Shown one piece after another: positions 1 to 45,567 of a stretch of 64,000 nucleotides of DNA (positions are counted from its first letter, which is position 1; each line of letters begins with the position of its first letter). The notes under the pieces are model-generated. The model did no database searches, was not told the origin of the DNA, and saw only the letters and a list, made by a program, of their open reading frames with translations. The DNA comes from Schmidtea polychroa (taxonomy: Eukaryota): the NCBI GenBank assembly GCA_044892525.1, contig CM097886.1:2914001-2978000 (forward strand). The letters run 5' to 3'. A program made the translations under genes and the position numbers.

Positions 1-2703
1 ATTTATATTCAAAGATTTATTTTTAAAACGACAATGTTTCAATCAGTTCAATATTTGAATGTGTTCAATTATTTTAGGGCCTTCAACTGTAAATTTATTT
101 TTCACTGGTCCAATCTTTACGGTTATTTTCTTAGGTGTACGTTCCACTAAACCTTTTTTTCTAAACTTTGAAATTATTTGATTAGTTCTCTTTTCGACTG
201 CTTTGGTGAGAAAATCATCTGGAAAAAACATTGGATATTTGGATAATTCATTTTCAGTTGTTGCATTAATAGGCCATTTCCACAGCTCAAAAAAAGGACA
301 CAAATTCATTTTGGATATATTAGAAGTAATCGTAATCCAAAGTTGAATTTTGTCATTGTCAGAAACCTTTTTTTTTCTTATTTCATAAAACTGTCGGAAT
401 GCTTGAGCAAATAACTCCCATCCAAAATGATGCCTTAGTTGTGCAAATATAGATAATGCTATAAAATGGTTATCTCTCCAGTTGGCATCAAATGTTCCAT
501 TAATCAAATAATCTTTTACGTCGTTAATTGTTAACCGTTCTTGAAACCAACCAGTAGTTGGATCCCAAGAACTTTGGTTAGTTATGTATTCAGTAGCTAT
601 TATAGAAAATATGTTGTTTGTTGTTTCTCCCGTTCCCTTGAAAGTAAATATTCCATATTGTAGGTTATGTCCCATCTCATGCATCAAACCCCATTGACCT
701 GTTTTAATATTTTTTATTGTAAAAAAAAATTCACTTCTTTTAGGATTTGCAACCCACCAAATCTGTGTACCGATAGGATATCCTGAATGCATATATCCAG
801 CTCCAATTTGTATATCAGTTGTCACTAATTCTCTGTAATTATCAGGAAATTTTCTTCCACCCAAATGAAATTCTTCTTTAAACATTGAATCGTACAGCTT
901 TAAAATCGCCTCCGGATCGGCTACATTTCGAATGGCACTTGATGCTACTAAAAATACAGTTGTGTCACCGGCTAGGATTGCCCAAGGAGACTCCAATTTT
1001 TGTTTTCGAATCCATTCCTTTGAATCCTCTCGATTTCTTCTATCAAAGTACGGTATTTGCATTACATTTTTAAATATTATTTCGACTTTATCATTATTTT
1101 CCTTACAACAAATTGCAATCAATCCGCCAAATGGGAAATTAATAGTATGCGTTTTGTATCTTTCAATTTTATACTTCATACGCGTCACGGGCCATTTCGT
1201 AAATTGATATTTATAACCTATATTAATATGATGATGATTTAAATATATCGTGCAAGTCTTTGATATGGATTTAACAATTCTGATTGAGGTATCTAGTCTA
1301 GGATAAAGATAAAGACCAAGATAGACATCTTCGTCATTATAAAGAAGATTGAGCTTCATCTTAACATCTACAAGTGGAGGATTATCTGATTGAAATTTAC
1401 CAGGATAAAGCGCCAATGCTGGAGGTAGCACATCTACTTCGAATGGAGAAACTAAAATATAGCTGAAAAATCTAATGAAACATTTATCAGGTTCTTTATC
1501 AATCGGTTTATCAATACAAGAAGTGAGACTTTTAATGAATGGCCAGTTATCTGAATATAAATCCTGAAAATATTTTCTTATCAAGTCAAAGTTTTTTTTG
1601 CCAAATGCCTTCTTAACTGGAATTTTGTCAGGTATTTCATAAAGCAATGTTGTTACTTCATCCATGATTTTGTTGTCCGTTTTGGCATATTCAAATAATT
1701 GATTAAATGCCATGGTATGTATAGAGTGCTTAGTAACGGTTTTCCAATCATCTTCGGTATGGTATAGTTGTGGCCAAACCCCAGCAGCATGGAGCAGAAC
1801 CTTCAATTCACTATCTTCAATCTTTACTTGATTTTCGTATGACCATGGTTTTATCGCAATCACAATCCTCAATCCGGACTCTATAGCTGTAAGTAAAATA
1901 CCAACTAAATCTGGACCTATTATTTTATGACTATTCCAGATGAAAGGTACAGATAATATAGATTTTAATTTGTTCGCTGAAATTATTTCTCTAAAATATG
2001 ATTTTTCCAACAACTTTGGTTTTTTTACAGGTTTCTCAAAGACATTTTGAAAAAAGTCTTGAAATTGTTTATACTGCGTTTCATCCGCTGCGTTATCGCT
2101 CGAGATAAATGCAATACGGCCTTTTCCGACAGTTGAAATGGTCATGGAAATTCTATTTTTACTATTGATTGCGTAACCGATTGCGTTATCATGCAACAAT
2201 AAAAAGTTACCTGGATATCTATCCAAAGAATATCTCAACTCCTTTTTATTTCTATAATATGCATTCATCTAAATTCATAATTAAATAAATTTTTCCATAA
2301 AATATAAATAATTTATTTAATATTATGCAAATATTTTTTAAATTAATTATAAATTAAAATTTTTAAAATAAATATAATGAATGCAAAAATTCATTTTCCT
2401 ATATCCCTTTGTTTTATACGATTCGTTCTGAAACTAAGAAATAACTTTAATCAACCTTAACATAAAATAAGAGAAGTAAATTCCACGATTCAAAAACGTT
2501 AGTTAATTCAACATAATTTGAAATTTACATTTCTTTAAACATTAAACCGAAACACAACAAAATTAAAAAAATATTTTCTAAATTTCAGTAGGATAGAAAA
2601 CTTAACCTACAAAAACATGACAACTCAAGCACACATCCTACCAACGTGATACGCAGACATTAATTAAAAAATATCCATCAAAGATTTGATTGGATGCACA
2701 CCT
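1..2703. repeat. Duplicated block A (M60 ORF plus about 430 bp upstream); partner at 15946-18651
   Basis: Bases 1-60 match 15946-16005 almost exactly. Similarity ends at ...gattggatgcacacc (2703 / 18651). Confidence 0.92.
43..2268 (-). CDS. TCAF/FAM115-like M60-family zinc metallopeptidase, copy 1 (741 aa, intronless; possibly the terminal exon of the kringle gene upstream)
   Basis: HEMGH zinc motif (WGLMHEMGHNLQ) followed by GETTNNIF (gluzincin third ligand), and DIQIGAGYMHSGYP typical of M60/enhancin-like peptidases. N-terminal TISTVGKGRIAFIS resembles vertebrate TCAF AASSYGRGRLVVVS. ATG directly preceded by TTTAG. Confidence 0.93.
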   Translation of the reverse strand: MNAYYRNKKELRYSLDRYPGNFLLLHDNAIGYAINSKNRISMTISTVGKGRIAFISSDNAADETQYKQFQDFFQNVFEKPVKKPKLLEKSYFREIISANKLKSILSVPFIWNSHKIIGPDLVGILLTAIESGLRIVIAIKPWSYENQVKIEDSELKVLLHAAGVWPQLYHTEDDWKTVTKHSIHTMAFNQLFEYAKTDNKIMDEVTTLLYEIPDKIPVKKAFGKKNFDLIRKYFQDLYSDNWPFIKSLTSCIDKPIDKEPDKCFIRFFSYILVSPFEVDVLPPALALYPGKFQSDNPPLVDVKMKLNLLYNDEDVYLGLYLYPRLDTSIRIVKSISKTCTIYLNHHHINIGYKYQFTKWPVTRMKYKIERYKTHTINFPFGGLIAICCKENNDKVEIIFKNVMQIPYFDRRNREDSKEWIRKQKLESPWAILAGDTTVFLVASSAIRNVADPEAILKLYDSMFKEEFHLGGRKFPDNYRELVTTDIQIGAGYMHSGYPIGTQIWWVANPKRSEFFFTIKNIKTGQWGLMHEMGHNLQYGIFTFKGTGETTNNIFSIIATEYITNQSSWDPTTGWFQERLTINDVKDYLINGTFDANWRDNHFIALSIFAQLRHHFGWELFAQAFRQFYEIRKKKVSDNDKIQLWITITSNISKMNLCPFFELWKWPINATTENELSKYPMFFPDDFLTKAVEKRTNQIISKFRKKGLVERTPKKITVKIGPVKNKFTVEGPKIIEHIQILN

Positions 2704-3750: not shown

Positions 3751-4017
3751 GACATAAAACTCTGAAAATTTACGTGACAATACTTTGAAAATGATGGACA
3801 ATCAGCGACTTTCATTCGGCCAACATAATAAGTCTCAAAAATGTCGTGAAAATTCAAAAAATTTAGTTGACTTATATAAAATATTTGTTGACCTACATAA
3901 ACATACTAGGAACATTAGGGGAGGCAATCCTTAATAGAGGGATTGATCAAGCGGTGTCCAATCCATCTATTGTCTGATTTTAAAATGTTATTAAAATATT
4001 TGGAAAATTAATGTGCA

Positions 4018-5483
4018 AAATGCAATGAAAACTTTTGTTTTAAATGTTTTTAAATAGCTTTTTTTCTAAATTATTTTTTTCTATATATATTAAAAAGCTT
4101 GACTATGATTGTTTGTTTTCTAAATAAGAGTGCAGTATAATAATAAAATATACCTTTTTTTGATATTCATTAAACTCTTTATTAGGAGGCTTTTTTGGAT
4201 AGAGTGTTCCCGACTGTTTGATTGTGAAATCTGAACTTTTTAGCAAGGATATCAACATCAAATATTTCAACGGTTCCAAACAAGAATAGGAAATTATGTA
4301 ATTTTCACTTGTTTTTGTCGACTTGGTAATTGAACAAAATTCATATTCATCTAAATCAGTTTGACATTCAGGATTATAAGCTGATGCCCACAATGATGTC
4401 TTTTTTAAAGTTCGAGATTTCAGTGACTCTTAGAAATTAATAATAAAACACAACAGAATGTGATTCTTGTTACCAAGTTTGATGGACAAAGTAACTGTCA
4501 CTGTATGATATATATTATCCAATGTAACTATTGTCATGCTCTTACGAATTCCTTTCAAGTAATCATATGCTCCAAAATATTCCGTCTGACCCATTTCTAA
4601 AAATTAATTATTGTAAATGTGACTGACAAAATTGTTATCACGTTTTTCACAATTAACTATGTGACAGTCTTCTCTTTTATAGTTATCCGAATAATAACAC
4701 CAAGGACTTTTAGACTGATCCGGATTGCGACATTTGTTACCAGCAAGATTTAGATTCCTTTCCGGAAATGAGTTTGCGGTATGTCTTTTGAAGTTTATCC
4801 ATGGCTTACATCTTTTACCAGATTTTGTTTGACTTATGTCGCCAAGATATTCTGTACCCTTTTCAGTATCTTTGCACCAATTTCGATCTAATAATTACAG
4901 AGTTCTCAGATGTAGTAGAATTGAAGTTGTTACCTTTATTGCACTTTTTAATATAACAGGATTCCCATTCCAATGTCATTTCATCGATAATACACCACGG
5001 ACCATTTGGAAAATTCGTTGGATTTCTACAGTAATTGTTACCAATAAGCGAGGTATTGTCAAAATAAAATGTATCATCCATAACTATTTGATTTACATAT
5101 TCACTTTTCCAAAAGATACATCGTTGCCCACTTTTTGCATAATTCTTCATCCCCAAATATTCTCTACCGTGAGTTGTCATTCTACATTTTTCTATTTCTG
5201 AATAATTTTTAAAATGAATTGAAACTTTTCAACTCTATGTTTACTTTTCAAATGATTGTTTATTGTGACTTTTCTTTTGAATTTAAATAGTGTATAAACC
5301 CAATATACTTTTTTTCCAAAAGAGTCCAACAAGCACAGAGTATTTGGGACCCAATGGATAATGGCTAGTAGTGTGAAAGAGATTGGAAAAATTTAGTTAT
5401 GTTAATTAATAAATTTAATTCATTGATGTATGAACCTGGTACAAATCCTTCTGATTGACTGATTAAAAACTTGAAAAAAAGCA
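4018..5483. repeat. Duplicated block B (kringle exons 2-5 with introns and flanks); partner at 20038-21533
   Basis: Near base-for-base identity at offset 16019-16020. Confidence 0.95.
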
Positions 5484-8400: not shown

Positions 8401-9534
8401 ATCTAGTCGGTTAAAAGTGAATTTTATAGTAAAATGAAATTTTAAAGAGTCATTTTCATTATAGATTTAAGTGATTTAATATTTATGATTTAATTATTTT
8501 TAATTATAATTGGTTTTATTGAACTTAAGCGAGTTTCAGTAGATTTTATAAATTATTTAGGGTTAATAAGCAATTCAATTTACTTGATTTTAGATGTTTT
8601 ATAGTGAAATATTTATGATATTTAGATAAAAGGAATTAAGATCAAAGTTAAAGGGCGTTTAAAAATAGTCATTTAAAAGGATTTTAAGGAATCTTATTGG
8701 TTTGATATTAAGAGGGGAATAAATGATCTTTTGCATGTATTTATCGCTAAAATACCAATCTTTAAAAATCAATAGATATTTTAGGGAAGTTTCATACTTT
8801 TTAGATGATTTTAATAGGAACCAGTCATTCGCTTGGATACAGAAAACATGTATTTTCATTTAGAGCAAATTATTTAGAGAACTGGTTCATTCGATGTTAT
8901 CTTTAGTGAGTTTATATCAGTTTCCTTTGAAATTTAATGATAATTATTCAGATATTTCTAGCATTGATTGATGATTTTGATAATTTGTAAATGAATTTAT
9001 ACTGGATTTTCTGAATAATTTTAGCAATAAGTCCATCAGTCGAGTATACATTATTAATTACTTTTGAGACATCATCAAAATTAATTTATTTTAATTATTT
9101 ATTCAATCTAAATAAATTATTTACTAGATTTTGTTAGAAAATTCTTATTAACTAGAATGAAGATCTTGGATAATTCAAATTTAGTGACATATAATAATGT
9201 ATGTAATGAAAAAAGTTTCGACTATAAGATAGTCCTTGTCAATCTCCTTGACAGGATTGACAGGAGATTAACAAGGAATATCTTATAGTCGAAAATATTT
9301 TCATTAAATACATTATTTGCAGCAAAAGGTTTAAATTATCATTTTATTGTTTTAAATAATAAATGCTGCTACCAAGAAATCATCATTTTATATTACTTTA
9401 TAATTATTTTAATTTAAAATTAAGCTAAAATGAAATACGCAAAATTTCTCACCTTCGAAATAATCTGCAAAAATGATAAGTTGCAAAGACAATATTATGG
9501 ACAAGTGGACAATCAGCATGAATATAGGGATCAT
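4154..9534 (-). CDS. Signal peptide + 2 kringle + linker module, copy 1; exons 9534-9453, 5197-4934, 4887-4642, 4596-4474, 4428-4154 (330 aa, open at the 3' donor)
   Basis: Kringle 1: GREYLG...SGQRCIFW...NNYCRNPTNFPNGPWC. Kringle 2: GTEYLGDISQTKSGKRCKPW...NKCRNPDQSKSPWCY. All introns GT-AG and phase-compatible (1,1,1,1); small introns 45-46 nt. Exon 1 MIPIFMLIVHLSIILSLQLIIFADYFE is hydrophobic and is conserved in copy 2. Confidence 0.82.
5640..7345 (+). mobile_element. Decayed Ty3/gypsy LTR retrotransposon fragment (gag-protease-RT), antisense in kringle-1 intron 1
   Basis: Gag-like PFYRNNPALWF...SKFKLSQISNDSTKFHHV; protease FLVDTGASVSCL; RT PDRYPIPRIDD, TTPFGMYEFLFMPFGLRNAP, and YLDD at 7195-7206; many frameshifts and stops. 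Confidence 0.9.
7350..7760 (-). mobile_element. hAT transposase N-terminal fragment
   Basis: KKRRTSWNDSYATDFGFIK (BED-finger start), AKEAAIAYHTGRHNF and KFTLGRTKTAAIIKKVIAP in shifted frames. Confidence 0.7.
9210..9300. mobile_element. Short palindromic MITE-like element; relative at about 14315-14390
   Basis: ttcgactataagatagtccttgtcaatctcc...ggagattaacaaggaatatcttatagtcgaa forms an inverted repeat. Confidence 0.65.
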
Positions 9535-9850
9535 TTGGCCATACTGGCTCTGATTGTTCCTTTTAATATGTGTAGGTCACATTGACAATTTGCATTAATT
9601 TGCATGATTTTATGAGGAAATGTCTCGTATAAAAATAATTTTATGAATATAACAAGTGATCATTAATCATAATCAAGTCATAATCATAAACATTAATCAT
9701 AATCATTAATCATAATCAAGTAAAATATGTTATTTATTCAATCTAAAATTCTAATTATGTTATGAACTCTTTAAAATGTCTCTTGTGAATTAATCTCTAA
9801 CACTTAATATTTTGAATTTTTGTATCAAATTTGGGAATAGAAAATAGAAT
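9391..9850. repeat. Duplicated block C (kringle exon 1 and its upstream region); partner at 25411-25817
   Basis: Near-identical at offset 16020; copy 1 carries an extra taatcataatca expansion. Confidence 0.92.
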
Positions 9851-13778: not shown

Positions 13779-14387
13779 TCTTTTATATTATTAATTATTT
13801 ATTTTATTTATTATTCCTTTGTTTTCGAGTTTGCAAATTTTCAAACGCTTTATTTCTCTATTAACTACGTTAGTAATTGTATCTTCTTGCGTTTATCAAT
13901 TTTATTATACGTGTTTTATTTATTCTCAATGTGTTGTGTACTTTACTTTGTATTATTTAGTTTATAACCATAGATTTTAATTCAACTTGGTGCAGTTTTT
14001 ATGCTATATATTTTCGACTCATTAAAACAAGCTCTCGATTTTTTGGCTCTAGACCAACAAAATAAAGTCGATAATAATGATGTATTTTCTACTATTAGGA
14101 AATTTTCAAGCGCTAGAATTGCACAAATATTCTAATATATGTTGTTTAATGTTAATAAATGTATTTATTCATATTTGTGTTTGTTTTTTATTTCACATAG
14201 AAATAATAATAATATAATAATAATAATAATATAAAGTGATGATTTCTTGGTAGCAGCATTTATTATTTAAATCAATAAAATGATAATTTAAGCCTTTTGC
14301 AGCAAAAAATGTCTTTAATAAAAAGATTTTCGACTATAAGATTGTCCTTGATAGGCAAAAGGCTTAAATTATCATTTTGTTGTTTTA

Positions 14388-14444
<57 letters not shown>
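14388..14444. repeat. (AAT)n microsatellite
   Basis: Pure aat run. Confidence 0.97.
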
Positions 14445-14445
<1 letters not shown>

Positions 14446-14892
14446 TCACAGACTTTGCAACAATAATGCAAATTAATTTCAATAGAAATGCAAATTTTAA
14501 CAAAGACATACTATAAACAAAGTCATGTTAAAATTTAAAAATAATAATAATGTTGTCAGAGAAAGGTAAAATAGATGTATATAATATTCTGTTAATTTTT
14601 ATTTAGAATTTTTAATCAACTTTTTATTTGAAAAACTAGAGCAAATAACCGGTGTAAGAATTTAAAAAAAAAGACTGTTTCAGAAGCATTGAATGGAGAA
14701 TTGGAGAATTTGGAGAATTTGTTTAAATATCCAATACAATTCAGATCCGATTGTATGCTAAACACTCTGTATAAAAAGGCTAACTTCTAAGCAAAAATTT
14801 TCATTCTTGTAGTGACTGCCCTGCTGGTTGGTTGATAATTTTGATTAGCTACTATTGTGAAATTAGTGTATTTTTTAGGCAATTAAACGCTT

Positions 14893-15660: not shown

Positions 15661-15987
15661 ATTTTTGATATTATTGTTTTTACCATAGTCTATGTTTTTT
15701 TTAAATGTAAAGCTAAAAACTGTAGTTAATTTTTAATAAATTTTTAATGTTATTTTCTTGCCATCATTTAATCCGCCCTATTTTATTCTAATTCCTGTAG
15801 AGCATCAGGCGGTATATAGTTTGGGGGCCCGCTTTAGGATGTGGGGGCCATGGTTAAATAACAAAACGTTAATTTGTTTAAATTGTATTTGTTTAAACTT
15901 TGTATTTGTTTTAGTCATCATTTCACACTCGCTTTTAAAATATAAATTTATAATCAAAGATTTATTTTTAAAACGACAATGTTTCAA

Positions 15988-18222
15988 TCAGTTCAATATT
16001 TGAATGTGCTCAATTAGTTTAGGGCCTTCAACTGTAAATTTATTTTTCAATGGTCCAATCTTTACGGTTATTTTCTTAGGTGTACGTTCCACTAAACCTT
16101 TTTTTCTAAACTTTGAAATTATTTGATTAGTTCTCTTTTCGACCGCTTTGGTGAGAAAATCATCTGGAAAAAACATTGGATATTTGGATAATTCATTTTC
16201 AGTTTTTCCATCAATAGGCCATTTCCACAGCTCAAAAAAAGGACACAAATTCATTTTGGATATATTAGAAGTAATCGTAATCCAAAGTTGAATTTTGTCA
16301 TTGTCAGAAACCTGTTTTAATTTCTTTTCCATTACATCAAACTGTCGGAATGTTTGAGCAAATAACTCCCATCCAAAATGATGCCTTAGTTGTGCAAATA
16401 TAGATAATGCTATAAAATGGTTATTTCTCCAGTTGGCATCAAATGTTCCATTAATCAAATAATCTTTTACGTCGTTAATTGTTAACCGTTCTTGAAACCA
16501 ACCAGTAGTTGGATCCCAAGAACTTTGTTTATGCATGGATTCAGTAGCTATTATAGAAAATATGTTGTTTGTTGTTTCTCCCGTTCCCTTGAAAGTAAAT
16601 ATTCCATATTGTAGGTTATGTCCCATCTCATGCATCAAACCCCATGGACCTGTTTTAAGATGTTTTATTGAAAATATAAAGTTATCTTTAGTAGGATTTC
16701 CAAGATGATATACCATTGTACCGATAGGATATCCTGAATGCATATATCCAACTCCAATTTGTATATCAGTTGTCACTAATTCTCTGCGTCTATCAGAAAC
16801 GTTTCTTCCTCTCAAATGAAATTCTTCTTTAAACATTGAATCGTACAGCTTTAAAGGCGTCTCCGGATCGGCTACATTTCGAATGGCACTTGATGCTACT
16901 AAAAATACAGTTGTGTCACTAGCAAGGATTGCCCAAGGAGACTCTAATTTTTGTTTTCGAATCCATTCCTTTGAATCCTCTCGATTTCTTCTATCAAAGT
17001 ACGGTATTTGCATTACATTTTTAAATATTATTTCGACTTTATCATTATTTTCCCTACAAGAAATTGCAATCAATCCGCCAAATGGGAAATTAATAGTATG
17101 CGTTTTGTATCTTTCAATTTTGTACTGCATACGCGTCACGGGCCATTTCGTAATTTCAGATTTATAAGCTATCATAATTTGATGATGATTTAAATATATC
17201 GTGCAAGTCTTTGATATGGATTTAACAATTCTGATTGAGGTATCTAGTCTAGGATAAAGATAAAGACCAAGATAGACATCTTCGTTCCTAAAAGGAAGGT
17301 TGAGGTTCATCTTAATATCTACAAGTGGAGGATTATCTGATTGAAATTTACCAGGATAAAGCGCCAATGCTGGAGGTAGCACATTTACTTCGAATGGAGA
17401 AACTAAAATATAGCTGAAAAATCTAATGAAACATTTATCAGGTTCTTTATCAATCGGTTTATCAATACAAGAAGTGAGACTTTTAATGAATGGCCAGTTA
17501 TCTGAATATAAATCCTGAAAATATGTTTTTATCAAGTCAAAGTTTTTTTTGCTAATTCCTTGCTTAATTGGAATTCTGTCAGGTATTTCATAAAGAAATA
17601 TTGTTACTTCATCCATGATTTTGTTGTCCGTTTTGGCATATTCAAATAATTGATTAAATGCCATAGTATGTATAGAGTGCTTAGTAACGGTTTTCCAATC
17701 ATCATCATGTAAGGATAATTCTGGCCAAACCCCCGCAGCATAAAGCAGAACTTTGATTTCAGAATCTAAAATATTTTGTACATAGGCTTCGTATACCCAT
17801 GGTTTTATCGCTATGACAATCCTCAATCCGGACTCTATATATGTAAGTAAAATACCAACTAAATCTGGACCTATTATTTTATGACTATTCCAGATGAAAG
17901 GTTCAGATAATATAGATTCTGATTTGTTCGCTGAAATTATTTCTTTTAGATATGATTTTACCAAAAACTTTGGTTTTTTTACAGGCTTGTCAAAGACATT
18001 TTGAAAAAAATCTTGGAATTGTTTATACTGCGTTTCATCCGCTGCATCATGGCTCGAGATAAATGCAATACGGCCTTTTCCGACAGTTGAAATGGTCATG
18101 GAAATTTTATTTTTACTATTGATTGCGTAAGCGATTGCGTTATCATGCAACAAGAAAAAGTTACCTGGATTTCTACCCAAAGAAATTTTCAACTCTTTTT
18201 TATTTCTATAATATGCATGCAT
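15988..18222 (-). CDS. TCAF/FAM115-like M60 metallopeptidase, copy 2 (744 aa, intronless)
   Basis: Same HEMGH...GETTNN motifs, colinear with copy 1, ATG preceded by TTTAG. Confidence 0.93.
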   Translation of the reverse strand: MHAYYRNKKELKISLGRNPGNFFLLHDNAIAYAINSKNKISMTISTVGKGRIAFISSHDAADETQYKQFQDFFQNVFDKPVKKPKFLVKSYLKEIISANKSESILSEPFIWNSHKIIGPDLVGILLTYIESGLRIVIAIKPWVYEAYVQNILDSEIKVLLYAAGVWPELSLHDDDWKTVTKHSIHTMAFNQLFEYAKTDNKIMDEVTIFLYEIPDRIPIKQGISKKNFDLIKTYFQDLYSDNWPFIKSLTSCIDKPIDKEPDKCFIRFFSYILVSPFEVNVLPPALALYPGKFQSDNPPLVDIKMNLNLPFRNEDVYLGLYLYPRLDTSIRIVKSISKTCTIYLNHHQIMIAYKSEITKWPVTRMQYKIERYKTHTINFPFGGLIAISCRENNDKVEIIFKNVMQIPYFDRRNREDSKEWIRKQKLESPWAILASDTTVFLVASSAIRNVADPETPLKLYDSMFKEEFHLRGRNVSDRRRELVTTDIQIGVGYMHSGYPIGTMVYHLGNPTKDNFIFSIKHLKTGPWGLMHEMGHNLQYGIFTFKGTGETTNNIFSIIATESMHKQSSWDPTTGWFQERLTINDVKDYLINGTFDANWRNNHFIALSIFAQLRHHFGWELFAQTFRQFDVMEKKLKQVSDNDKIQLWITITSNISKMNLCPFFELWKWPIDGKTENELSKYPMFFPDDFLTKAVEKRTNQIISKFRKKGLVERTPKKITVKIGPLKNKFTVEGPKLIEHIQILN

Positions 18223-18910
18223 CTAAATTCATAATTAAATAAATTTTTCCATAAAATATAAATAATTTATTTAATATTATGCAAATATTTTTTTAATTAA
18301 TTATAAATTAAAAATTTTATATATCCTTATTTTTTATACCATTCGTTCTGAAACTGAGAAATAGATGTAATCAACATTAACATAAAACCTTAACATAAAA
18401 TAAGAGAAGTAAATTCCACGATTCAAATACTTTAATTGATTCAACATTATTTGAAATTTAAATTCCTTTATACTTTTCTATTTTTTATTTTTTATTTTTT
18501 TTATAAACCTAAAGACAACAAAATAAAAAAAATATTTTCTAAATTTCAGTAGGATAGAAAACTTAACACACAAAAGCATAACAATTCCAGCACACACACA
18601 TCGTGGCACGAAGGCATTATATCCATCAAAGATTTGATTGGATGCACACCAAATACATCAATTCATTTTCTTTGATGTTTCAAGAATTTTTGAACAGGGA
18701 AAATTATTTAAATTTTATTTATGTTTTAAAATATCTTTTTTAGAACATATTGATCAAGCCTCAAATTATGCCCCAGAACTAAATGGGAGGATGCTGTTGC
18801 TAAAGATGTACCTGGATTTATATACATTGAGGAACAATGTTGTGATTCATTTGAAAAATGTTAGTGTTGTTTTACTTATATAATTTTCTATGATTTTTTA
18901 TTTGTTTATG

Positions 18911-18969
<59 letters not shown>

Positions 18970-18980
18970 AAGAAGAAGAA
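18911..18980. repeat. Compound (AAT)n(AAG)n microsatellite
   Basis: Direct reading. Confidence 0.97.
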
Positions 18981-18984
18981 CAAA

Positions 18985-19330
18985 GTTTAATTTGTAATAT
19001 AAACATTATAAAACAAATCTTAACTTTAAATTAATTAATGATAAGATATTTTCTTATTTTTCTTGAAGCATCTGTAAGGATCCATTTATATTTTGTCTGA
19101 GATAAAGTTGCATTATGATAAAAAAAGTATAATCCCATGAACCCTGCAGTAATTATTGACATATTTATCCAAATCAGAATCGTAATGATCAATAAGTATG
19201 TAGCACGATATATAAACTATTACATATCATTTTATAGAAACAAACAAACTGCAAACAACTAATATCATTACACCAAAGAAAAAGCTAGCTATATCAGCAA
19301 CATCTTTGACCCTCGCTTAAAATATGGTAA
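18985..19330 (-). mobile_element. Possible 3' remnant of a CR1/L2-type LINE ending in the microsatellite
   Basis: Decayed coding-like sequence running into a simple-repeat tail; no intact motif. Confidence 0.3.
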
Positions 19331-19656
19331 GTTGAGATATGAATGTTTCCGTCTAGTAATTTCGATAAATATTCGATAAAATTCCAAATGTGAAATGATC
19401 ATTTGCAAATTCAATAATTAGTTTACTAGTAAACGATGCCAATGATAATCAAATTAATTATTGAGTCTTAGAATTCATAGATCACAAATCGATTGTATAC
19501 ATTACAATGATTTTCATTGAATAATTAATTTGATTATCATTGCATTTTGGTTACCTGGAATTTAATAAATTAAAAAAGAAAAAGAATTCAAACATAAATA
19601 ACAATCAAATTAACACGAAACATAAAATTAATAACAAACACAAAAATGGATATAAA

Positions 19657-19704
<48 letters not shown>
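19657..19704. repeat. (AAT)n microsatellite
   Basis: Direct reading. Confidence 0.97.
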
Positions 19705-20173
19705 TCAAAGAGACCTGCTGTTAGTATTCAATCTTGCGTCCCCTTTAAAATGATTTAAAAAGATCAAATTATTAAAAGTGACGATAAAGATGAATTTCAT
19801 TCAAATAATATTCAAGTAGGTGATTCGCTCGATATTGCCGACGAACCTAAAATTGAAATAGATTTTAAGGGAGCCAGAAAAAGTCTCACATTTGATGTGC
19901 AGATAAAAGATTTAATTCAAATCACTGTAACAAATAACCCTAACCCTAAACGATGCCAATGATAATCAAGTTAATTAACAATTTCGACCTGTGTGTAAAT
20001 TTACATTCTGAATTTGTCACTTTCTCCTTAATATGAAAAATGCAATGAAAACTTTTGTTTTAAATGTTTTTAAATAGCTTTTTTTCTAAATTATTTTTTT
20101 CTATATATATTAAAAAGCTTGACTATGATTGTTTGTTTTCTAAATAAGAGTGCAGTATAATAATAAAATATAC

Positions 20174-22579
20174 CTTTTTTTGATATTCATTAAACTCTTT
20201 ATTAGGAGGCTTTTTTGGATAGAGTGTTCCCGACTGTTTGATTGTGAAATCTGAACTTTTTAGCAAGGATATCAACATCAAATATTTCAACGGTTCCAAA
20301 CAAGAATAGGAAATTATGTAATTTTCACTTGTTTTTGTCGACTTGGTAATTGAACAAAATTCATATTCATCTAAATCAGTTTGACATTCAGGATTATAAG
20401 CTGATGCCCACAATGATGTCTTTTTTAAAGTTCGAGATTTCAGTGACTCTTAGAAATTAATAATAAAACACAACAGAATGTGATTCTTGTTACCAAGTTT
20501 GATGGACAAGGTAACTGTCACTGTATGATAGATATTATCCAATGTAACTATTGTCATGCTCTTACGAATTCCTTTCAAGTAATCATATGCTCCAAAATAT
20601 TCCGTCTGACCCATTTCTAAAAATTAATTATTGTAATGTTACTGACAAAATTGTTATCACTTTTTTCACAATTAACTATGTGACAGTCTTCTCTTTTATA
20701 GTTATTCGAATAATAACACCAAGGACTTTTAGACTGATCCGGATTGCGACATTTGTTGCCAGCAAGATTTAGATTCCTTTCCGGAAATGAGTTTGCGGTA
20801 TGTCTTTTGAAGTTTATCCATGGCTTACATCTTTTACCAGATTTTGTTTGACTTATGTCGCCAAGATATTCTGTTCCCTTTTCAGTATCTTTGCACCAAT
20901 TTCGATCTAATAATTACAGAGTTCTCAGATGTAGTAGAATTGAAGTTGTTACCTTTATTGCACTTTTTAATATAACAGGATTCCCATTCCAATGTCATTT
21001 CATCGATAATACACCACGGACCATTTGGAAAATTCGTTGGATTTCTACAGTAATTGTTACCAATAAGCGAGGTATTGTCAAAATAAAATGTATCATCCAT
21101 AACTATTTGATTTACATATTCACTTTTCCAAAAGATACATCGTTGCCCACTTTTTGCATAATTCTTCATCCCCAAATATTCTCTACCGTGAGTTGTCATT
21201 TTACATTTTTCTATTTCTGAATAATTTTTAAAATGAATTGAAACTTTTCAACTATATGTTTACTTTTCAAATGATTGTTTATTGTGACTTTTCTTTTGAA
21301 TTTAAATAGTGTATAAACCCAATATACTTTTTTCCAAAAAAGTACAACAAGCATAGAGTATTTGGAACCCAATAGATAATGGCTAGTAATGAGAAAGAGA
21401 TTGTAACAATTTTGTTATGTTAATTAATAAATTTAATTCATTGATGATAGTTTGATATTAGGGAGATGTATGGACCTGGTACAAATCTTTCTGATTGGCT
21501 GATTAAAAACTTGAATCATTCTTATTATATTTCATTCAGGTGAGGTGGCAATCAGTTTTGTATTGTTTAAAGCAGTGGTAGGGGAGGCGCCAAAACCTTT
21601 AGGTAAAAAATGATTTTCATACTATAATATCTACAAATAAATGAAACTTCATATTGTAACGAAACTGTAAATATTCAGTAAATAAATACTTAATTTTATT
21701 TTTATTAAATTTCTATACATACATTTAATTCGTATATAAAAATTATCCGAAGAGGAAGATTTTAAAATTGGCGCCTTTGCAACGCTCTGTTTCGGTAATG
21801 CACAAAACGCCCTCTAGTTGCACGAAACAATAACCTCAAATTTATACGTCACTCGTCGCAAAAGTGTGAACTGTAGCGAATTGGCTGGATGTGTTATTGT
21901 TATTATCGTGATTTCTTTCTGAAAACAATCGTTAGTATATTTTCATATTTATATTTAATTATTATTTATTTTAAATTATATCAATAAAATATTTTTAGAA
22001 AAATGGATAAATTTTTGAGTGGGTACAAGAGAAAAGTTGTGCATATATTCATGTAAGGTTAAAAAATATTAATAATAATTATAATATTAATAATAATAAT
22101 AATGATAACAAAGCCATTGAAAATGATGCAGATGACGGAGAAATTGAAGACAGACGAAATAATGCAGAAATTGAAAACGATCTTATAGACATAGACGATG
22201 TTTTGATGACAGACTTGGGAGATTATGATTAAAAAACTTTATTTTTTATTTAATTGTTATTATTTTTATTTGTTGTCTCTTAATCACAACTAAATGAAAA
22301 TAATATTTAAACAAATTAACAACTAATAATTGTTATTATGTTTCATAAAGTAATTTTATAAAGAAATTTTTACATTTTGTAAATTTTTAATTTAAAATTT
22401 AGATTAATTTTTTATATTAATTTAAGATTTATTAGTTTAAGATTATTAGTTGTTAATTTGTTTAAATATTATTATTTTCATTTAGTTGTGATCTATACGA
22501 TTCCTAGCGTGAAGAATACTGTTAAACGGTCGAAATTTATAGCAATATTATATTTTAATATGCTTAGTTGACGATTTTC

Positions 22580-22610
<31 letters not shown>

Positions 22611-25554
22611 GTTGTCATTTTAAATATTATTAATATTCACAAAAATTTATTTCATAAAAATTTTGTATATACACACCATATTTCGTGGCCTACTTTAAAT
22701 TCTAAGTGAACTTAGATATTTTCCTGGGTGCTGGAGATGAAATGGTGTGGATTGGACACATATCTACTCTAGGTAAGCAACCACTTTATAATATTGATTT
22801 CTTAAGTCAAATCGAAGGGGTCTGCTTGAATTAATTATTAACCAAATAACTAGTTTCTAATATATTAACAAATAACTAGCTTTGCATTAAGTGGCTTGAC
22901 GTTACTAGTACTACACTAACAGAACTATTGATTTTAAGATTAATATATATTGATTTTTATTAATTTTATTATTAAGATTTAGAGTATTAAAGAAATGTTA
23001 GACAAAATCGAGCCGCAGGCATATACCAAACGTTAGTGTATGCTAGTATGTATGTGACGTTTCCTCTTTTAACTCCTTCACCTAATTTTCAACCAAAAAT
23101 GATACGATTCATAGTGTATAAGTTGTAAAATATTGGGTGCCATGCAGTGGCGGACTGGGCCGCCGGGACACTGGGACATTTCCCGGTGGGCCGGTCGAAT
23201 TAGAGGCCGTGAGGCCGGCGATATGTAAACTATTAAATTATTTCTTCTGATTAAAAAAAATAAATAAATGAAACAATATACAATACACACATACCTCGCT
23301 TTACGGCCTAGATACATTCTACGAAACTTGGCCGCAAAGCTATATTCCTCAGAGGGATTCTCATCATATTCACGCAAGTATTCAGGGAAATAAGCGATTG
23401 AGTGATGTGAGCACCATTATTGAGTTAAGAAAAATGTGTAAAAGTATAAATGACTTAAAATACTTGGATCATATAAAAAATGTCAACTCTTGAGTTTTTT
23501 TAACATGAAACCAAAGAAGAAATAAAATATAGATTGAAAAAATATTAAATCTTTTATTAAAAAGACCATGATTTTGAAAATCTATTGGAAGAACTAACAA
23601 TGCAGAGCAATGAACATACAGTTGGTTATTTTTAATGAAACTAATTAAGGATGTTCAACATTGTTGTTTATGTGGATCATTTTTGGTGTTAACCAAAAGC
23701 AAAGGTGCCGTATTAAATTTGGAATGGCGATGCCAAGTAAAATAATTATATACACGTAACAGCACTAGTTTAAGAGAAAATAGTGTTTTTAGAAACATGC
23801 TTTCTTTTTACGAAAATTTTAAAGATATATATATGGTGGTCACAAAATTTAAACAGCATGAAATATCTAAATTTGTAAAAGTGTCACGACCAACACTGTT
23901 GTATTGATGGTTTCGGCAGTTATCTCCGTTTTCGGATGAAATTGATTGACATTATTAGATAATGACTTTGATAAATCTTTAAGGCCTTAAGGATTACTGA
24001 ATTTGTCTTCAATTTCTTCTGTAACACAATTTGAAATTCCATAATTTGATGAACATTTCAAAGAATCGTGATAAATAGATTTATATTCAGCAGCAGTTAG
24101 GTTTGACAAGATCTTTCCAATGAAACGAAATGAGTTTAAGAATATTTATGTACCATTAATAAAACATCGAGATAATCGACAAGAAATGTAAAAGCTAAAT
24201 TATTTAATGAATTTGAATTAGAAATCCATTTAATTTTAAATAGTTCCCAAAGAAATATATCTTCAATAAAATGGATAACTGGTTGAATATTTGAAAACAT
24301 GGATAAACTGTTTAAAGCTGGTATAGAAGATAATTCCAAGTCGTTGAAATTTTAATGTAATAACTATAAAAAGGTTCAAAAAATAATAATTATCAATTTG
24401 AAAAATCTTTATTATCCAATTTAGCTGTATTCAAAATAACTAACTTAACAAATACTTAATATTCAAACAACATGTTTTTTCTTAAATAAATGTTTTTAAG
24501 AAACAAAAAATAACACAAATGTTTTTTAAACTGTTTTCATTATTACTTAAATAAACTTTTTTTGAAAATCTTAAACGCCTCTAAAATTACAACAAACACT
24601 TCAAAAAATAAGACAATTATTTATCGAAAGAAAAAAAAATTATTTTCAAAAAAATCCTATTCGACTTGGTGATTTTTATGTCATAGTTCAATATTATAAG
24701 ACAATGTTAAATAGCAAAGTAAAAAGCCATCGTGGTCCGAAAGAAAAAACATGTGCTTTCATGAACACTTAAACTATACCAGTTTTGGGTTATATTGAAA
24801 TTATTCTTAATCGGTCAAGGAATATATTATTGTCCATTATCAACCGTGTTGTTAGAACAGGTTCAATAATTCGCACTAATGATTGGGCATCATATTCAAA
24901 GTAAATTCGGTAAATTGTTTTGAACATGCCACAGTTGCACACAAATACCATTTCGTGTTCCAATTATGGGAGTGCATACTCAACACGTTGAAAACCTTAA
25001 CAATAGGTAATGTGGAAAATAAAGAAAATGAAAGGATTTAATTGAAAGAAAATATTTTGCATTTTGAACAAGTTCGAATTTCTGGCATACAATAAAATGC
25101 TTGATTATTGTTAAATATTTTATTCTTCCAATTAATGTAGCGTAAAATTGTTAATGTTTAATATATCATTTTTGACGTTATTTTACATTTTATTTAAGTT
25201 GACTTTTTTATATGATCATATTTTTTCGTTTTTTTAATGATACAAATCATTTAAGATTTTATAACAAAACTTTACTAATAAGCCAGTAAGAATTTTATGT
25301 GAGACATTGGTCATTGAATTATTACATCAAATTATTGTTTCCTTATCCACCATTTGATAGATTATGATGGCAGATATGCTGTGGATAATTTTCTTGGCAA
25401 TATATTTTATTATTACTTTATAATTATTTTAATTTAAAATTAAGCTAAAATGAAATACGCAAGATTTCTCACCTTCGAAATAATCTGCAAAAATGATAAG
25501 TTGCAAAGACAATATTATGGACAAGTGGACAATCAGCATGAATATAGGGATCAT
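20174..25554 (-). CDS. Signal peptide + 2 kringle + linker module, copy 2; exons 25554-25473, 21216-20953, 20906-20661, 20616-20494, 20448-20174
   Basis: Near-identical to copy 1 (about 7 coding substitutions by eye); all splice sites intact. Confidence 0.82.
22505..22544 (+). ncRNA. Degenerate minimal hammerhead motif (CUGAAGA family); relative at 43035-43074
   Basis: tagc-gtgaaga-atactg-ttaaa-cggtc-gaaa-tttata-gca; C3 mutated. Confidence 0.4.
23560..25100 (+). mobile_element. Merlin (IS1016/IS1595-like) transposase remnant, interrupted at about 23930-24660
   Basis: N-terminal CCLCGSFL...WRC...SLRENSVF...VSRPTL..WF; catalytic half GSIIRTNDWASY...HATVAHKYHFV...GVHTQHVENL. Confidence 0.8.
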
Positions 25555-43323: not shown

Positions 43324-45567
43324 TCAATTCAAAAGTTCAATTTCTTCTATAATTTGTTTTCCTTCAATTGCAAATTTATTTTTCAAAGGTCCGATTTTTT
43401 CTGGAATGGTAAAAGGCTTACGGAGAACTAAATCTATTCCTCCAAACTTTGAAATTATTTCATCAACTCTCTTCTCGACCATTTTTGTAAGAAAATCATC
43501 TGGAAGAAACATTGGAAGTTTAGATAATTCTTTTTCAGTTTTCTGACTAATTGGCCATCTCCACAACTCATATAAAGGACACAAATTCATTCCGGATATT
43601 TCAGATGTAACTTTAATCCAAAGTTGAATTTTGTCTTCATCAGAAATGCTGCCAATTTCTTTCAGCAATACATTATACCGACGAAATACTTGAGCATAAA
43701 ACTCCCATCCAAAATTTTTTCGTTGCTGCGCATAAATAGCTAATGCTAAGTAATTATTATTTTTCCATTGTTGAAATGTGCCATTATTTATATGGTTTAC
43801 TAGATCATTAATATAAAGTTTTTCTGGAAGCCATCCATTGGTTGGAGACCAAGAACTGTGATTGGTCATAGATTCAACAGCTACTAACGTAAATATGTTA
43901 TTGGTCACTTCCCCGACTCCACTGAAAGTGAATATAGTTTCTTGTAAATTGTGTCCAAGTTCATGCATCAAACCCCATTCACCATCAATTTTAATATTAT
44001 ACATGTGGAAAAAATAATCTTTTTCATTAGAGGGATTTGTGACCCAGAATATCGGTGTACCGATAGGGTATCCCGCATGCATATATCCTGCTTTTATTTG
44101 TATATCTGTTGACACCATTTCTCTACGACTTGCAGTAATTGTTCTTGCTATCAAATGAAACTCTTCTTTCACCATAACATCGTACAATTCTAAAAACGAA
44201 TTCGGATCGGCAAAATTACGAATAGCATTTGATGATAATACAAATACAAGAGTGTCACTAGCAACAACTGTCCATGGTGAAACTAGTCTTTGCTTGTGGA
44301 TCCAATTTTTTGAATCTTCTTTGTTTCTCCTATCGAATAGCGGTATTTGTACCACATGATTGAAAGTTATTTCAACTTTATCATTATCTTCATCACAGGA
44401 AATAGAAAGCAATCCGCCAAAAGAAAATGAAAATATTTGCAATTTATTTCTTTCAATAGAGAATTGAATGTTTGTTTTAGGCCATTTATAAAATTCTGAT
44501 TTATAGGAAACGTCAAAATGGTGATAATTGATGTATATAAAGCAAAATTGAGACTTTGATTGAGTAATTTGAACGGAAAAGTCCTCCCCAGGAGTAGCAT
44601 AAAGACCAAGCTGAGCAACTTCTTTGTTGTAAATAAGATTCAGTCTCATTTTAATGTCTTTTAGTGGAATGTCATTCGAATAAAATTTTCCAGGATAAAA
44701 TGATAATCCAGGAGCATTCATTTTTTGGCCGAAAGGAGAAACTAAAATACTGTTGAAAACCCTCAAAAGTGTTTTACTTGATTCCTCAGTAAGACCAACT
44801 TCCCAACAAGGGATGAAACTCTTAATATATGGTAAATAATTTGAGTAGAGATCGACAGTGAGATTTTTGATTAAGTTAAATGTTGTTTTACTTAAAACCT
44901 TTTCGATTGAAATTTCGGAAATTATGTTCGTAATAGATTCTGCGGCATTTTGTAGGTTGATAGCATTTAATTTTGCATATTCAAGCCTTTCATACATTGG
45001 CATGGTGTATACGGAGGGTTGAGTAACGGTTCTCCAATTATTGTCAGCATATATAAGTGATGGCCAAACACCAGCTGCTAAAAAAAGAATTTTCAATTCA
45101 CTGTCGAAAATCTTTTTAAGATAGTGATCATATGCCCATGGTTTCACTCCAATAATTACCCTTAATCCAGAATTTACTAAGTGAAGTAAAGTACCAACTA
45201 ATTCTTCCCCCAATTGCTTATGAGCACTCCATATGAAAGGTTCCAATATTGCAGATTTCGAATTATTGTTGGAAATTAGCTCTTTCAAACCTTCTTTTGT
45301 CAAATACTTTGGACTTTCTACTGGCTTTTCATAGACATCATTGAACAAGTCTTTTAATTGTGGAAAGTATGTAGCATCAACTATTCCGTCGGTTGCCAGA
45401 AATGCGATTCTGCCTTTTCCAACTGTTGAAATTGTTATGGGGATTTGATTATCTGAATTAATGGCATACGCAATTGCGTTATTACTCAATAAAAAGAAAT
45501 GTCCAGGGTTTTGGTCCGATGGAATCTTCAATTCATTTTTGTTTTTCTTTTGGAAATACTCATTCAT
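43324..45567 (-). CDS. TCAF/FAM115-like M60 metallopeptidase, copy 3 (747 aa, intronless, diverged paralog)
   Basis: WGLMHELGHNLQ...GEVTNNIF, colinear with copies 1 and 2, ATG preceded by TTTTAG. Confidence 0.93.
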   Translation of the reverse strand: MNEYFQKKNKNELKIPSDQNPGHFFLLSNNAIAYAINSDNQIPITISTVGKGRIAFLATDGIVDATYFPQLKDLFNDVYEKPVESPKYLTKEGLKELISNNNSKSAILEPFIWSAHKQLGEELVGTLLHLVNSGLRVIIGVKPWAYDHYLKKIFDSELKILFLAAGVWPSLIYADNNWRTVTQPSVYTMPMYERLEYAKLNAINLQNAAESITNIISEISIEKVLSKTTFNLIKNLTVDLYSNYLPYIKSFIPCWEVGLTEESSKTLLRVFNSILVSPFGQKMNAPGLSFYPGKFYSNDIPLKDIKMRLNLIYNKEVAQLGLYATPGEDFSVQITQSKSQFCFIYINYHHFDVSYKSEFYKWPKTNIQFSIERNKLQIFSFSFGGLLSISCDEDNDKVEITFNHVVQIPLFDRRNKEDSKNWIHKQRLVSPWTVVASDTLVFVLSSNAIRNFADPNSFLELYDVMVKEEFHLIARTITASRREMVSTDIQIKAGYMHAGYPIGTPIFWVTNPSNEKDYFFHMYNIKIDGEWGLMHELGHNLQETIFTFSGVGEVTNNIFTLVAVESMTNHSSWSPTNGWLPEKLYINDLVNHINNGTFQQWKNNNYLALAIYAQQRKNFGWEFYAQVFRRYNVLLKEIGSISDEDKIQLWIKVTSEISGMNLCPLYELWRWPISQKTEKELSKLPMFLPDDFLTKMVEKRVDEIISKFGGIDLVLRKPFTIPEKIGPLKNKFAIEGKQIIEEIELLN

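What the first reader, a model, noticed from the sequence alone, without database searches (positions are those of the whole stretch)
16300..17800. Hypervariable patches in the peptidase between otherwise homogenised paralogs
Seen: copies 1 and 2 share long identical stretches but differ in dense amino-acid-changing clusters: SYENQVKIE/VYEAYVQNIL, QLYHTE/ELSLHD, LLYND/LPFRN, HINIGYKYQF/QIMIAYKSEI, GGRKFPDNY/RGRNVSDRR, QIWWVANPKRSEFFFTIKNI/MVYHLGNPTKDNFIFSIKHL just before HEMGH, and YEIRKK/DVMEKKLK. Catalytic residues are invariant, while the kringle modules differ at only about 7 of 990 coding nt. Inference: diversifying selection on substrate-contact surfaces, as in host-parasite or digestive arms races.
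Basis: partly seen in the sequence, partly recalled or inferred. Interest (0 to 1): 0.72.

Follow-up and report, generated by a model that had tools for sequence, protein, structure and literature searches.

The report
Patchy divergence between twin M60 peptidase genes
Two neighbouring copies of a secreted zinc peptidase gene are kept nearly identical by copying from each other, except in a dozen short loop patches packed with amino-acid changes; the patches in the catalytic part look like adaptive divergence of substrate-binding loops, but this is not proven.

Summary
Copies 1 (43-2268, minus strand) and 2 (15988-18222, minus strand) are intact last exons of tandem kringle-kringle-M60 peptidase genes and are 87% identical in protein. 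All seven listed patches exist, HEMGH plus the downstream Glu are unchanged, and the kringle exons differ at 6 of about 960 coding nt.

An objective scan finds 12 patches. These 107 codons (14%) hold 95 of 126 non-synonymous differences. The clustering exceeds every one of 20,000 shuffles and a null matched to family-wide site variability.

- **Exon structure.** The exon is a gene-conversion mosaic. Synonymous difference per site is 0.15 in the first ~190 codons and 0.03 after.
- **N-terminal patches.** dS is about equal to dN, so these look like older unconverted sequence.
- **Catalytic-part patches.** dN is 0.51 against dS 0.14. A neutral old-island null is rejected at joint P of 0.003 or less in ascertainment-aware simulations.
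- **Controls.** The same procedure on four other young pairs of this family gives patch omega 0.2-1.1.
- **Caveats.** Patch synonymous divergence is still 4-6 times the background, differences are spread almost evenly over codon positions, and whole-gene omega is 1.04.

The largest patch lies between the substrate-pairing strand and the catalytic helix. No 3-D distances, clean polymorphism data or RNA evidence could be obtained. This is a known kind of pattern in a new gene family.

The parts
15988..18222 (-). Copy 2: 744-codon last exon (N-terminal domain + M60-like_N + Peptidase_M60) of a kringle-M60 gene; the finding's object
   Evidence: ORF; Pfam PF17291 + PF13402; AlphaFold model pLDDT 89 with fold hits to IMPa, 4FCA, AM0627, ZmpB and BT4244
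43..2268 (-). Copy 1: paralogous 741-codon exon, 87% protein and 90% nt identity to copy 2
43324..45567 (-). Copy 3: older paralog (53% protein identity, dS ~1), used as outgroup
16618..16632 (-). HEMGH zinc-binding and catalytic motif (residues 531-535); the third ligand Glu549 is at 16576-16578; both identical in copies 1 and 2
   Evidence: aligns with H325/E326/H329 and E343 of AM0627
16657..16716 (-). Largest patch, residues 503-522: 14 amino-acid differences, 61% nt identity, 2.2 synonymous against 20.8 non-synonymous differences. It lies between the conserved strand GYMHSGYPIGT and the catalytic helix. Residue 526 (P in copy 2, Q in copy 1) aligns with AM0627 D318.
   Evidence: no other copy of either variant in the genome; pLDDT 66-78
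16786..16812 (-). Patch at residues 471-479 (RGRNVSDRR vs GGRKFPDNY): helix end and loop before the strand leading to the substrate-pairing strand
16528..16539 (-). Patch at residues 562-565 (SMHK vs YITN): end of the Glu549 helix, aligned 3 residues before AM0627 R362
16312..16338 (-). Patch at residues 629-637 (DVMEKKLKQ vs YEIRKKK), with a 6-nt in-frame indel
16204..16212 (-). Patch at residues 671-673 (DGK vs NAT)
17284..17316 (-). Patch at residues 303-313 (IKMNLNLPFRN vs VKMKLNLLYND) in the M60-like_N beta domain
17152..17181 (-). Patch at residues 348-357 (QIMIAYKSEI vs HINIGYKYQF): loop of the M60-like_N domain
17551..17577 (-). Patch at residues 216-224 (RIPIKQGIS vs KIPVKKAFG)
17704..18189 (-). 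Older layer of the exon (first ~190 codons), holding patches 12-18, 86-93, 143-156 and 168-173. Synonymous divergence here is 0.16, and patch dS is about equal to patch dN.
18223..18654 (-). About 430 nt of intron next to the exon that still aligns with copy 1 (~9% mismatches plus indels); homology ends abruptly at 18654
15860..15987 (-). About 130 nt downstream of the stop that still aligns with copy 1 (92%); this is the end of the homology island
20028..21515 (-). Kringle 1, kringle 2 and linker exons with short introns; 96.8% identical to copy 1 at 4008-5475, with 6 coding differences
25429..25554 (-). Probable first exon with a hydrophobic signal-like start, inside a third island that aligns with copy 1 (9385-9849, 85%)
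   Evidence: inference only, no RNA support

Best explanation
Copies 1 and 2 are tandem paralogs, 15.9 kb apart, of a multi-exon gene for a probably secreted protein: two kringles, a linker and a TCAF-like M60 zinc peptidase. The duplication is old, because the intergenic and most intronic DNA no longer aligns. Interlocus gene conversion keeps three islands alike, and the 2.2-kb peptidase exon is one of them. Inside that exon conversion has left two age layers: the first ~190 codons are older and the rest was homogenised recently. Nearly all remaining protein differences sit in 12 short, loop-rich patches. In the M60-like_N and catalytic parts the patches carry several times more non-synonymous than synonymous divergence. 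Both copies are derived, and the zinc site and the family-invariant core are untouched. The largest patches flank the strand, the Trp before HEXXH and the loop that hold the glycopeptide in solved M60 enzymes. The most likely mechanism, which is inferred, is positive or diversifying selection driving specificity-determining loops of the two enzymes apart. The dense mismatches, or selection against converted alleles, then shield these loops from further homogenisation, which would also explain their somewhat higher synonymous divergence. The N-terminal-domain patches are more simply older sequence that conversion has not reached.
For: Only three islands align between the two units, and homology ends sharply 430 nt upstream and 130 nt downstream of the exon. 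Synonymous divergence has a change point at column 189 (0.147 vs 0.034, 2dlnL 16; Fisher 7e-5). ML omega is 1.04 for the whole exon against 0.25 versus copy 3, and 3.0 for columns 441-748 (p=0.026). Patches after column 196 have dS 0.14 and dN 0.51, against dS 0.021 and dN 0.016 outside them. Neutral islands of any age from 0.15 to 0.70 give a joint P of 0.003 or less with patches re-ascertained in each simulation. Four control pairs of the same family give patch omega 0.81, 0.19, 0.39 and 1.09, with patch dS 0.38-2.3. Polarity is symmetric, with 25-30 changes derived in copy 2 and 30-40 in copy 1, and only 5 of 162 family-invariant sites differ. Both ORFs are intact and all indels are in frame. 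There is no donor for the largest patch elsewhere in the genome and no excess of tandem nucleotide changes (37 vs 33.5). Patches are enriched in loops (odds ratio 2.0, p=0.0009). The HMMER alignment to AM0627 places patch 503-522 between the Y287-D292 strand and D318/W321, and patch 562-565 three residues before R362; the contact residues come from PMC9325726. The region at the start of the catalytic helix shapes a glycan pocket in Bacteroides caccae M60s (10.1101/2025.10.14.682407).
Against: Synonymous divergence is also raised inside the patches (0.21 vs 0.045 overall, p=0.0004; 0.14 vs 0.021 after column 196, p=0.005), so they are islands at the nucleotide level, not only at the protein level. 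Differences fall 41/37/28 on codon positions in patches, which is not different from uniform. For all 12 patches pooled, a neutral island of age ~0.35-0.45 is only weakly rejected. Whole-exon omega does not differ from 1. The comparison is pairwise, with few synonymous sites (40 in the key patches; 0 of 8 four-fold sites differ). Gene conversion and multi-hit codons are known sources of false positive-selection signals (my own knowledge: Casola and Hahn 2009; Venkat et al. 2018). There is no expression, splice or activity evidence.
Confidence: 0.5

Rival explanations
1. Old unconverted islands at weakly constrained surface loops. The two genes diverged long ago, and conversion later erased the differences everywhere except in short stretches whose dense mismatches block heteroduplex formation. 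These stretches evolve neutrally, so there is no adaptive divergence.
For: Patch synonymous divergence is 4-6 times the background. The spread over codon positions is near uniform. N-terminal patches have dS 0.37 against dN 0.48, and columns 136-195 have omega 0.33. Patches lie in loops and at family-variable positions (entropy 1.54 vs 1.13). Other pairs in the family show exactly such tracts. The pooled neutral-island null is only weakly rejected.
Against: For patches after column 196, no island age reproduces both 66 non-synonymous and 5 synonymous differences (joint P of 0.003 or less). The unchanged codons interspersed in the largest patch are identical at silent sites, whereas copy 3 and p4 differ there. 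Control pairs have patch dS 0.38-2.3 against 0.14-0.20 here. Clustering exceeds what family-wide variability predicts.
Confidence: 0.3
2. Clustered mutation. The patches were made by a few complex mutational events, such as error-prone synthesis or patchy mismatch repair during conversion or double-strand-break repair, or short templated replacements, and were then fixed by drift.
For: Five consecutive changed nucleotides (TGGTGG vs TATCAT) and many two- and three-hit codons (27 and 5) occur in the patches. Third-position changes come with first- and second-position changes. The conserved intron island also has an uneven mismatch density.
Against: Adjacent changed nucleotides are no more frequent than random placement within patches predicts (37 vs 33.5, p=0.22), and they show no within-codon against between-codon bias. 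No template exists in the assembly. Twelve separate patches in two lineages, none creating a stop or a frameshift, would need many such events that were all tolerated.
Confidence: 0.12
3. One copy is decaying (relaxed constraint after duplication), or the difference is an assembly or haplotype artefact.
For: Whole-exon omega is about 1.
Against: Both ORFs are intact in a 29% GC genome where stop codons are frequent, and all indels are multiples of three. Changes are symmetric between the copies, and family-invariant sites are kept. Contigs from run X1 reproduce copy 2 exactly, and the flanks of the two copies are unrelated.
Confidence: 0.05

Closest known systems
Bacterial peptidase_M60 O-glycopeptidases (AM0627, BT4244, ZmpB/ZmpC, IMPa, BcM60s)
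   Same: Pfam M60-like_N + Peptidase_M60. HEXXH plus a downstream Glu. Fold matches with Foldseek probability 1.0. The Trp four residues before HEXXH and the Asn four residues after the Glu ligand are conserved. In these enzymes, variable elements around the catalytic helix set glycan specificity.
   Different: This is an animal gene with kringle modules in front and a ~290-residue N-terminal domain. Identity is 13-17%. The position aligned with the GalNAc-binding Asp318 of AM0627 is Pro or Gln here. Activity on glycoproteins is untested.
TCAF (TRPM8 channel-associated factor) / eukaryotic M60-like proteins
   Same: Same length class and same M60-like core; a TCAF homolog is among the hits (P0037).
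   Different: TCAFs are cytosolic channel partners without kringles. Here kringle exons and a signal-like first exon precede the peptidase. Pfam PF27016, carried by most hits, was not reported for these proteins at E of 0.001 or less.
Concerted evolution with islands of divergence in tandem secreted-protein families (serpin reactive-centre hypervariability, snake-venom PLA2 genes, MHC and plant R-gene clusters; from my own knowledge)
   Same: Paralogs are homogenised in flanks and framework. Dense replacement changes are confined to short specificity-determining segments, with dN above dS there.
   Different: Here synonymous divergence is also raised in the segments and the statistical support is moderate. 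Neither the target nor the ecological driver is known.
Ordinary interlocus gene-conversion mosaics, as in the sister M60 pairs L010/L011/L015 and L009/L014 of this genome
   Same: Long identical tracts alternate with divergent tracts, and boundaries in the flanking DNA are sharp.
   Different: In those pairs the divergent tracts are rich in synonymous changes (patch dS 0.38-2.3, omega 0.2-1.1). In copies 1 and 2 the tracts are short (3-20 codons) and poor in synonymous changes.

Membership tests
Peptidase M60 (Pfam PF13402 with PF17291) | Profile match above the curated cut-off | tested here: met
   PF13402 scores 142.8 bits (cut-off 25.8) and PF17291 scores 34.7 bits (cut-off 23) for copy 2; copies 1 and 3 are similar
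Peptidase M60 (Pfam PF13402 with PF17291) | Gluzincin site: HEXXH plus a Glu ligand 8-28 residues downstream | tested here: met
   HEMGH at 531-535 and Glu549 in GETTNN, identical in copies 1 and 2
Peptidase M60 (Pfam PF13402 with PF17291) | Fold like the solved M60 domains | tested here: met
   AlphaFold model with pLDDT 89; Foldseek E from 1e-21 to 1e-11 to IMPa, 4FCA, AM0627, ZmpB, ZmpC and BT4244
Peptidase M60 (Pfam PF13402 with PF17291) | O-GalNAc recognition residues (AM0627 D318, W321, N347, R362) | tested here: inconclusive
   W527 and N553 align with W321 and N347. The D318 position is Pro (copy 2) or Gln (copy 1). The R362 position is Ser. The alignment is at ~15% identity.
Peptidase M60 (Pfam PF13402 with PF17291) | Glycan-dependent peptidase activity | not testable with these tools
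   Needs recombinant enzyme
Positive (diversifying) selection between paralogs | dN significantly above dS at the sites concerned | tested here: inconclusive
   Whole exon omega 1.04 (not significant). Columns 441-748 omega 3.0, p=0.026. Patches after column 196 omega 3.5, neutral-island simulation P of 0.003 or less. All patches pooled are only weakly significant, and the codon-position spread is uniform.
Positive (diversifying) selection between paralogs | Excess of fixed over polymorphic replacement changes (McDonald-Kreitman) | tested here: inconclusive
   Contigs of other samples (X5, X6) laid on copy 2 turned out to be partly copy-1 contigs or chimeras, so no clean polymorphism table could be built
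Positive (diversifying) selection between paralogs | Selected sites lie on the functional (substrate-contact) surface | tested here: inconclusive
   Two or three catalytic-domain patches flank aligned contact residues, and patches are loop-enriched.
Interlocus gene conversion (concerted evolution) | Paralogous coding islands much more alike than the surrounding DNA, with sharp borders | tested here: met
Interlocus gene conversion (concerted evolution) | Heterogeneous synonymous divergence along one gene | tested here: met
   Change point at column 189, 0.147 vs 0.034; kringle coding divergence 0.6%
Interlocus gene conversion (concerted evolution) | Paralogs within a species closer than orthologs between species | not testable with these tools
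   No ortholog of copies 1 and 2 is in the databases; the best outside hit is 41% identical

The most novel reading that the evidence does not exclude
The patches are segregating cassettes. Ongoing conversion between copies 1 and 2 reshuffles alternative versions of the substrate-binding loops among individuals, so the population carries a combinatorial set of M60 specificities, an MHC-like system built on a secreted glycopeptidase. Three hints point this way. Two DNA samples from another study hold only 63-66% of copy 2's 31-mers, although 38% are shared with copy 1 anyway. They show no copy-2-type contig at patches 303-313 and 348-357. One of their contigs joins the copy-1 downstream flank and copy-1 residues 671-673 to copy-2-type patch 629-637. 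Chimeric de Bruijn contigs could explain the last point.
Probability: 0.15. Interest if true: 0.65.

Novelty: new member of a known kind. Interest (0 to 1): 0.4.

Why it matters
Kringle-M60 peptidases of animals are uncharacterised, and this genome holds at least 17 M60 loci, eight of them in one 200-kb cluster. If the catalytic-domain patches are adaptive, they point directly to the loops that set substrate choice in eukaryotic M60 and TCAF-like enzymes, and they give a natural pair of near-isogenic enzymes for swap experiments. The case also shows a common trap. A striking amino-acid patch pattern in converted paralogs gives dN/dS above 1 partly through the way patches are picked, and the synonymous signal has to be checked with ascertainment-aware nulls and internal control pairs.

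Tried and rejected
- **Donor search.** Windowed nt identity of both copies to six other paralogs and a whole-genome DNA search with each variant of the largest patch found no near-identical template. Micro-conversion from an extant paralog is rejected for that patch.
- **Tandem multi-nucleotide mutation.** Adjacent changed bases are not in excess, and there is no within-codon bias.
- **Naive patch dN/dS.** Simulations showed that patches defined by amino-acid differences give pN/pS at or above the observed value in about half of neutral runs at low island age. The raw ratio was therefore dropped in favour of joint counts and control pairs.
- **Polymorphism and RNA.** The one read-laying run used contigs only. 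No run on record is RNA, and no splice joint between the linker exon and the M60 exon was seen. The 'variants' in X5 and X6 are mostly copy-1 states: the loose end of one contig equals the copy-1 downstream flank. No McDonald-Kreitman table was built.
- **Structure mapping.** The model has good confidence, but its coordinates are not exposed to scripts. Distances to the zinc could not be measured, so only secondary structure, pLDDT and a sequence alignment to AM0627 were used.
- **Site and branch-site likelihood models.** Not run, because deeper paralogs are saturated (dS of 1 or more) and conversion mosaics violate those models.
- **Literature.** A search for kringle plus M60/TCAF found nothing relevant.
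- **Orthologs.** The p5 ortholog-like protein P0001 lacks exactly the strand-plus-patch segment, so it could not serve as a replicate.
Full report
**What is there.** The window is a 29% GC stretch of a 781-Mb eukaryotic genome. It holds three intronless ORFs of 741-747 codons on the minus strand: copy 1 at 43-2268, copy 2 at 15988-18222 (the finding) and copy 3 at 43324-45567. All three match Pfam M60-like_N and Peptidase_M60 far above the cut-offs. tblastn with the database protein P0002 shows that each ORF is the last exon of a larger gene whose upstream exons encode two kringles and a linker. Like that note, I found no RNA proof of the joining splice. The genome has at least 17 M60 loci, eight of them within about 200 kb around the window.

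**The observation.** Copies 1 and 2 are 87% identical in protein, and copy 3 is 53% identical to either. The kringle and linker coding segments differ at 6 of about 960 nt.
- An objective rule finds 12 patches. These 107 codons contain 95 of the 126 non-synonymous differences.
- No shuffle out of 20,000 reaches the observed 20-codon maximum.
- A null that gives each site the difference rate of its family-variability class still predicts only 13.6 adjacent difference pairs, against 38 observed.
- Contigs of run X1 reproduce copy 2 exactly, including the largest patch.

**Background: a conversion mosaic.** Between the two 15.9-kb units only three islands align:
- the M60 exon with 430 nt of intron and about 130 nt of downstream flank;
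- the kringle block, at 96.8% identity;
- a 465-nt piece that probably holds the first exon.

Everything else is unalignable, and the borders are abrupt. Synonymous divergence inside the exon is not uniform. A single change point at column 189 separates 0.147 from 0.034 differences per synonymous site. 'Homogenised' is therefore right for the 3' two-thirds, while the first third belongs to an older layer.

**Selection tests.**
- Pairwise GY94 maximum likelihood gives omega 1.04 for copy 1 against copy 2, compared with 0.25 for copy 1 against copy 3.
- Columns 136-195 give omega 0.33 with a long branch. Columns 441-748 give omega 3.0 (LRT p=0.026).
- By Nei-Gojobori counting, all patches have dS 0.21 and dN 0.50, and sequence outside them has dS 0.045 and dN 0.021.
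- After column 196, patches have dS 0.14 and dN 0.51, and the rest has dS 0.021. Before column 196, patch dS is 0.37 and patch dN is 0.48.

Because patches are chosen by their amino-acid differences, I simulated neutral islands and re-ascertained the patches in every run. The raw pN/pS ratio turned out to be a poor statistic. For the patches after column 196, however, no island age between 0.15 and 0.70 yields both at least 66 non-synonymous and at most 5 synonymous differences (joint P of 0.003 or less).

As an internal control, the same procedure was applied to four other young pairs of the family. These show textbook conversion mosaics. They give patch omega 0.81, 0.19, 0.39 and 1.09, with patch dS between 0.38 and 2.3. 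The copy 1/copy 2 pair is thus unusual within its own family.

**What weakens the adaptive reading.**
- Synonymous divergence is clearly higher inside patches than outside (p=0.0004 overall, p=0.005 after column 196).
- Differences fall 41/37/28 on the three codon positions in patches, and 27/25/19 in those after column 196. Neither is distinguishable from uniform.
- Only 8 clean four-fold sites lie in patches.

The patches are nucleotide-level islands, either older than their surroundings or hit by more mutation. Gene conversion and multi-hit codons are known to mimic positive selection; this point rests on my own knowledge of the literature.

**Other alternatives tested.**
- No paralog in the genome can have donated either version of the largest patch.
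- Tandem nucleotide changes are not in excess.
- Neither copy is decaying. Both frames are open, indels are in frame, derived states are split evenly between the copies, and only 5 of 162 family-invariant positions differ.

**Location in the protein.** The AlphaFold model is confident (pLDDT 89) and matches IMPa over its whole length and other M60 structures over the catalytic half. Patches are enriched in loops and helix ends (odds ratio 2.0). The HMMER alignment to AM0627, read with the contacts listed in PMC9325726, gives the following placements:
- The nearly invariant GYMHSGYPIGT aligns with the substrate-pairing strand (Y287-D292).
- W527 aligns with W321, and N553 aligns with N347.
- The largest patch fills the 20 residues between that strand and the catalytic helix.
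- Residue 526 (Pro or Gln) aligns with the GalNAc-binding D318.
- Patch 562-565 sits three residues before the R362 position.

A preprint on Bacteroides caccae M60s describes a glycan pocket at the start of the catalytic helix. Five patches lie in the N-terminal domain, whose relation to the cleft is unknown.

**Other samples.** DNA runs from a second study hold only 63-66% of copy 2's sampled 31-mers, although 38% of those words also occur in copy 1. Most 'variants' in their contigs are copy-1 states, and one contig carries the copy-1 downstream flank. Yet that contig lacks the copy-1 indel and the copy-1 states of patch 629-637. Either the contig is chimeric, or that strain carries a different mosaic of copies 1 and 2. 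This cannot be settled with contigs.

**Verdict.** The pattern is real and non-random. The best reading (about 50%) is a conversion mosaic in which specificity loops of the catalytic region have been driven apart by selection and are shielded from homogenisation. The N-terminal patches are older unconverted sequence. A neutral old-island reading (about 30%) and clustered mutation (about 12%) remain open. The phenomenon is of a known kind, but it occurs in an uncharacterised animal kringle-M60 family.

Noticed in passing
L005 and L006 (G000:C2:3076166-3078385 and 3105046-3107226): Two paralogs have Asp instead of the third zinc-ligand Glu (T/G-D-VTNN where the others have GE[TV]TNN), while HEXXH is kept.
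   Followed up: no
window 15988-18222 and the hits: The 744-codon last exon is intronless and collinear with ~740-residue bacterial M60 proteins (28-30% identity, the same three Pfam domains in the hits). This could reflect an old horizontal origin of the peptidase module, later joined to kringle exons.
   Followed up: no
P0001 and P0002: P0001 is 90% identical to paralog p5 where aligned, but it lacks exactly 35 residues: the substrate-pairing strand plus the hypervariable patch. P0002 is 77% identical to copy 3 and lacks the catalytic core. Both are probably mis-predicted gene models from a related organism.
   Followed up: partly
L010, L011, L015 (G000:C1 85.15-86.32 Mb); L009, L013, L014: Other young M60 pairs (84-98% identical) show long identical tracts next to tracts rich in synonymous changes, so gene conversion is common in this family. 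L013 has a shorter open frame (633 codons).
   Followed up: partly
window 15901-16645, contigs of runs X5 and X6: A contig from another study joins the copy-1 downstream flank and copy-1 states at residues 671-673 and 738 to copy-2-type sequence further up, and it has six further differences from both reference copies (four synonymous). It is either a chimeric contig or a strain with a different conversion mosaic.
   Followed up: partly
L018 (G000:C2:3072697-3072840): A short M60 fragment with an internal TAG, probably a pseudogene remnant inside the cluster.
   Followed up: no
window 18872-19006, 19540-19758 and 14180-14450: Low-complexity microsatellite-like runs (poly-Ser/Tyr or poly-Asn in translation) in the large intron and intergenic DNA account for the spurious short alignments between the units.
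   Followed up: no
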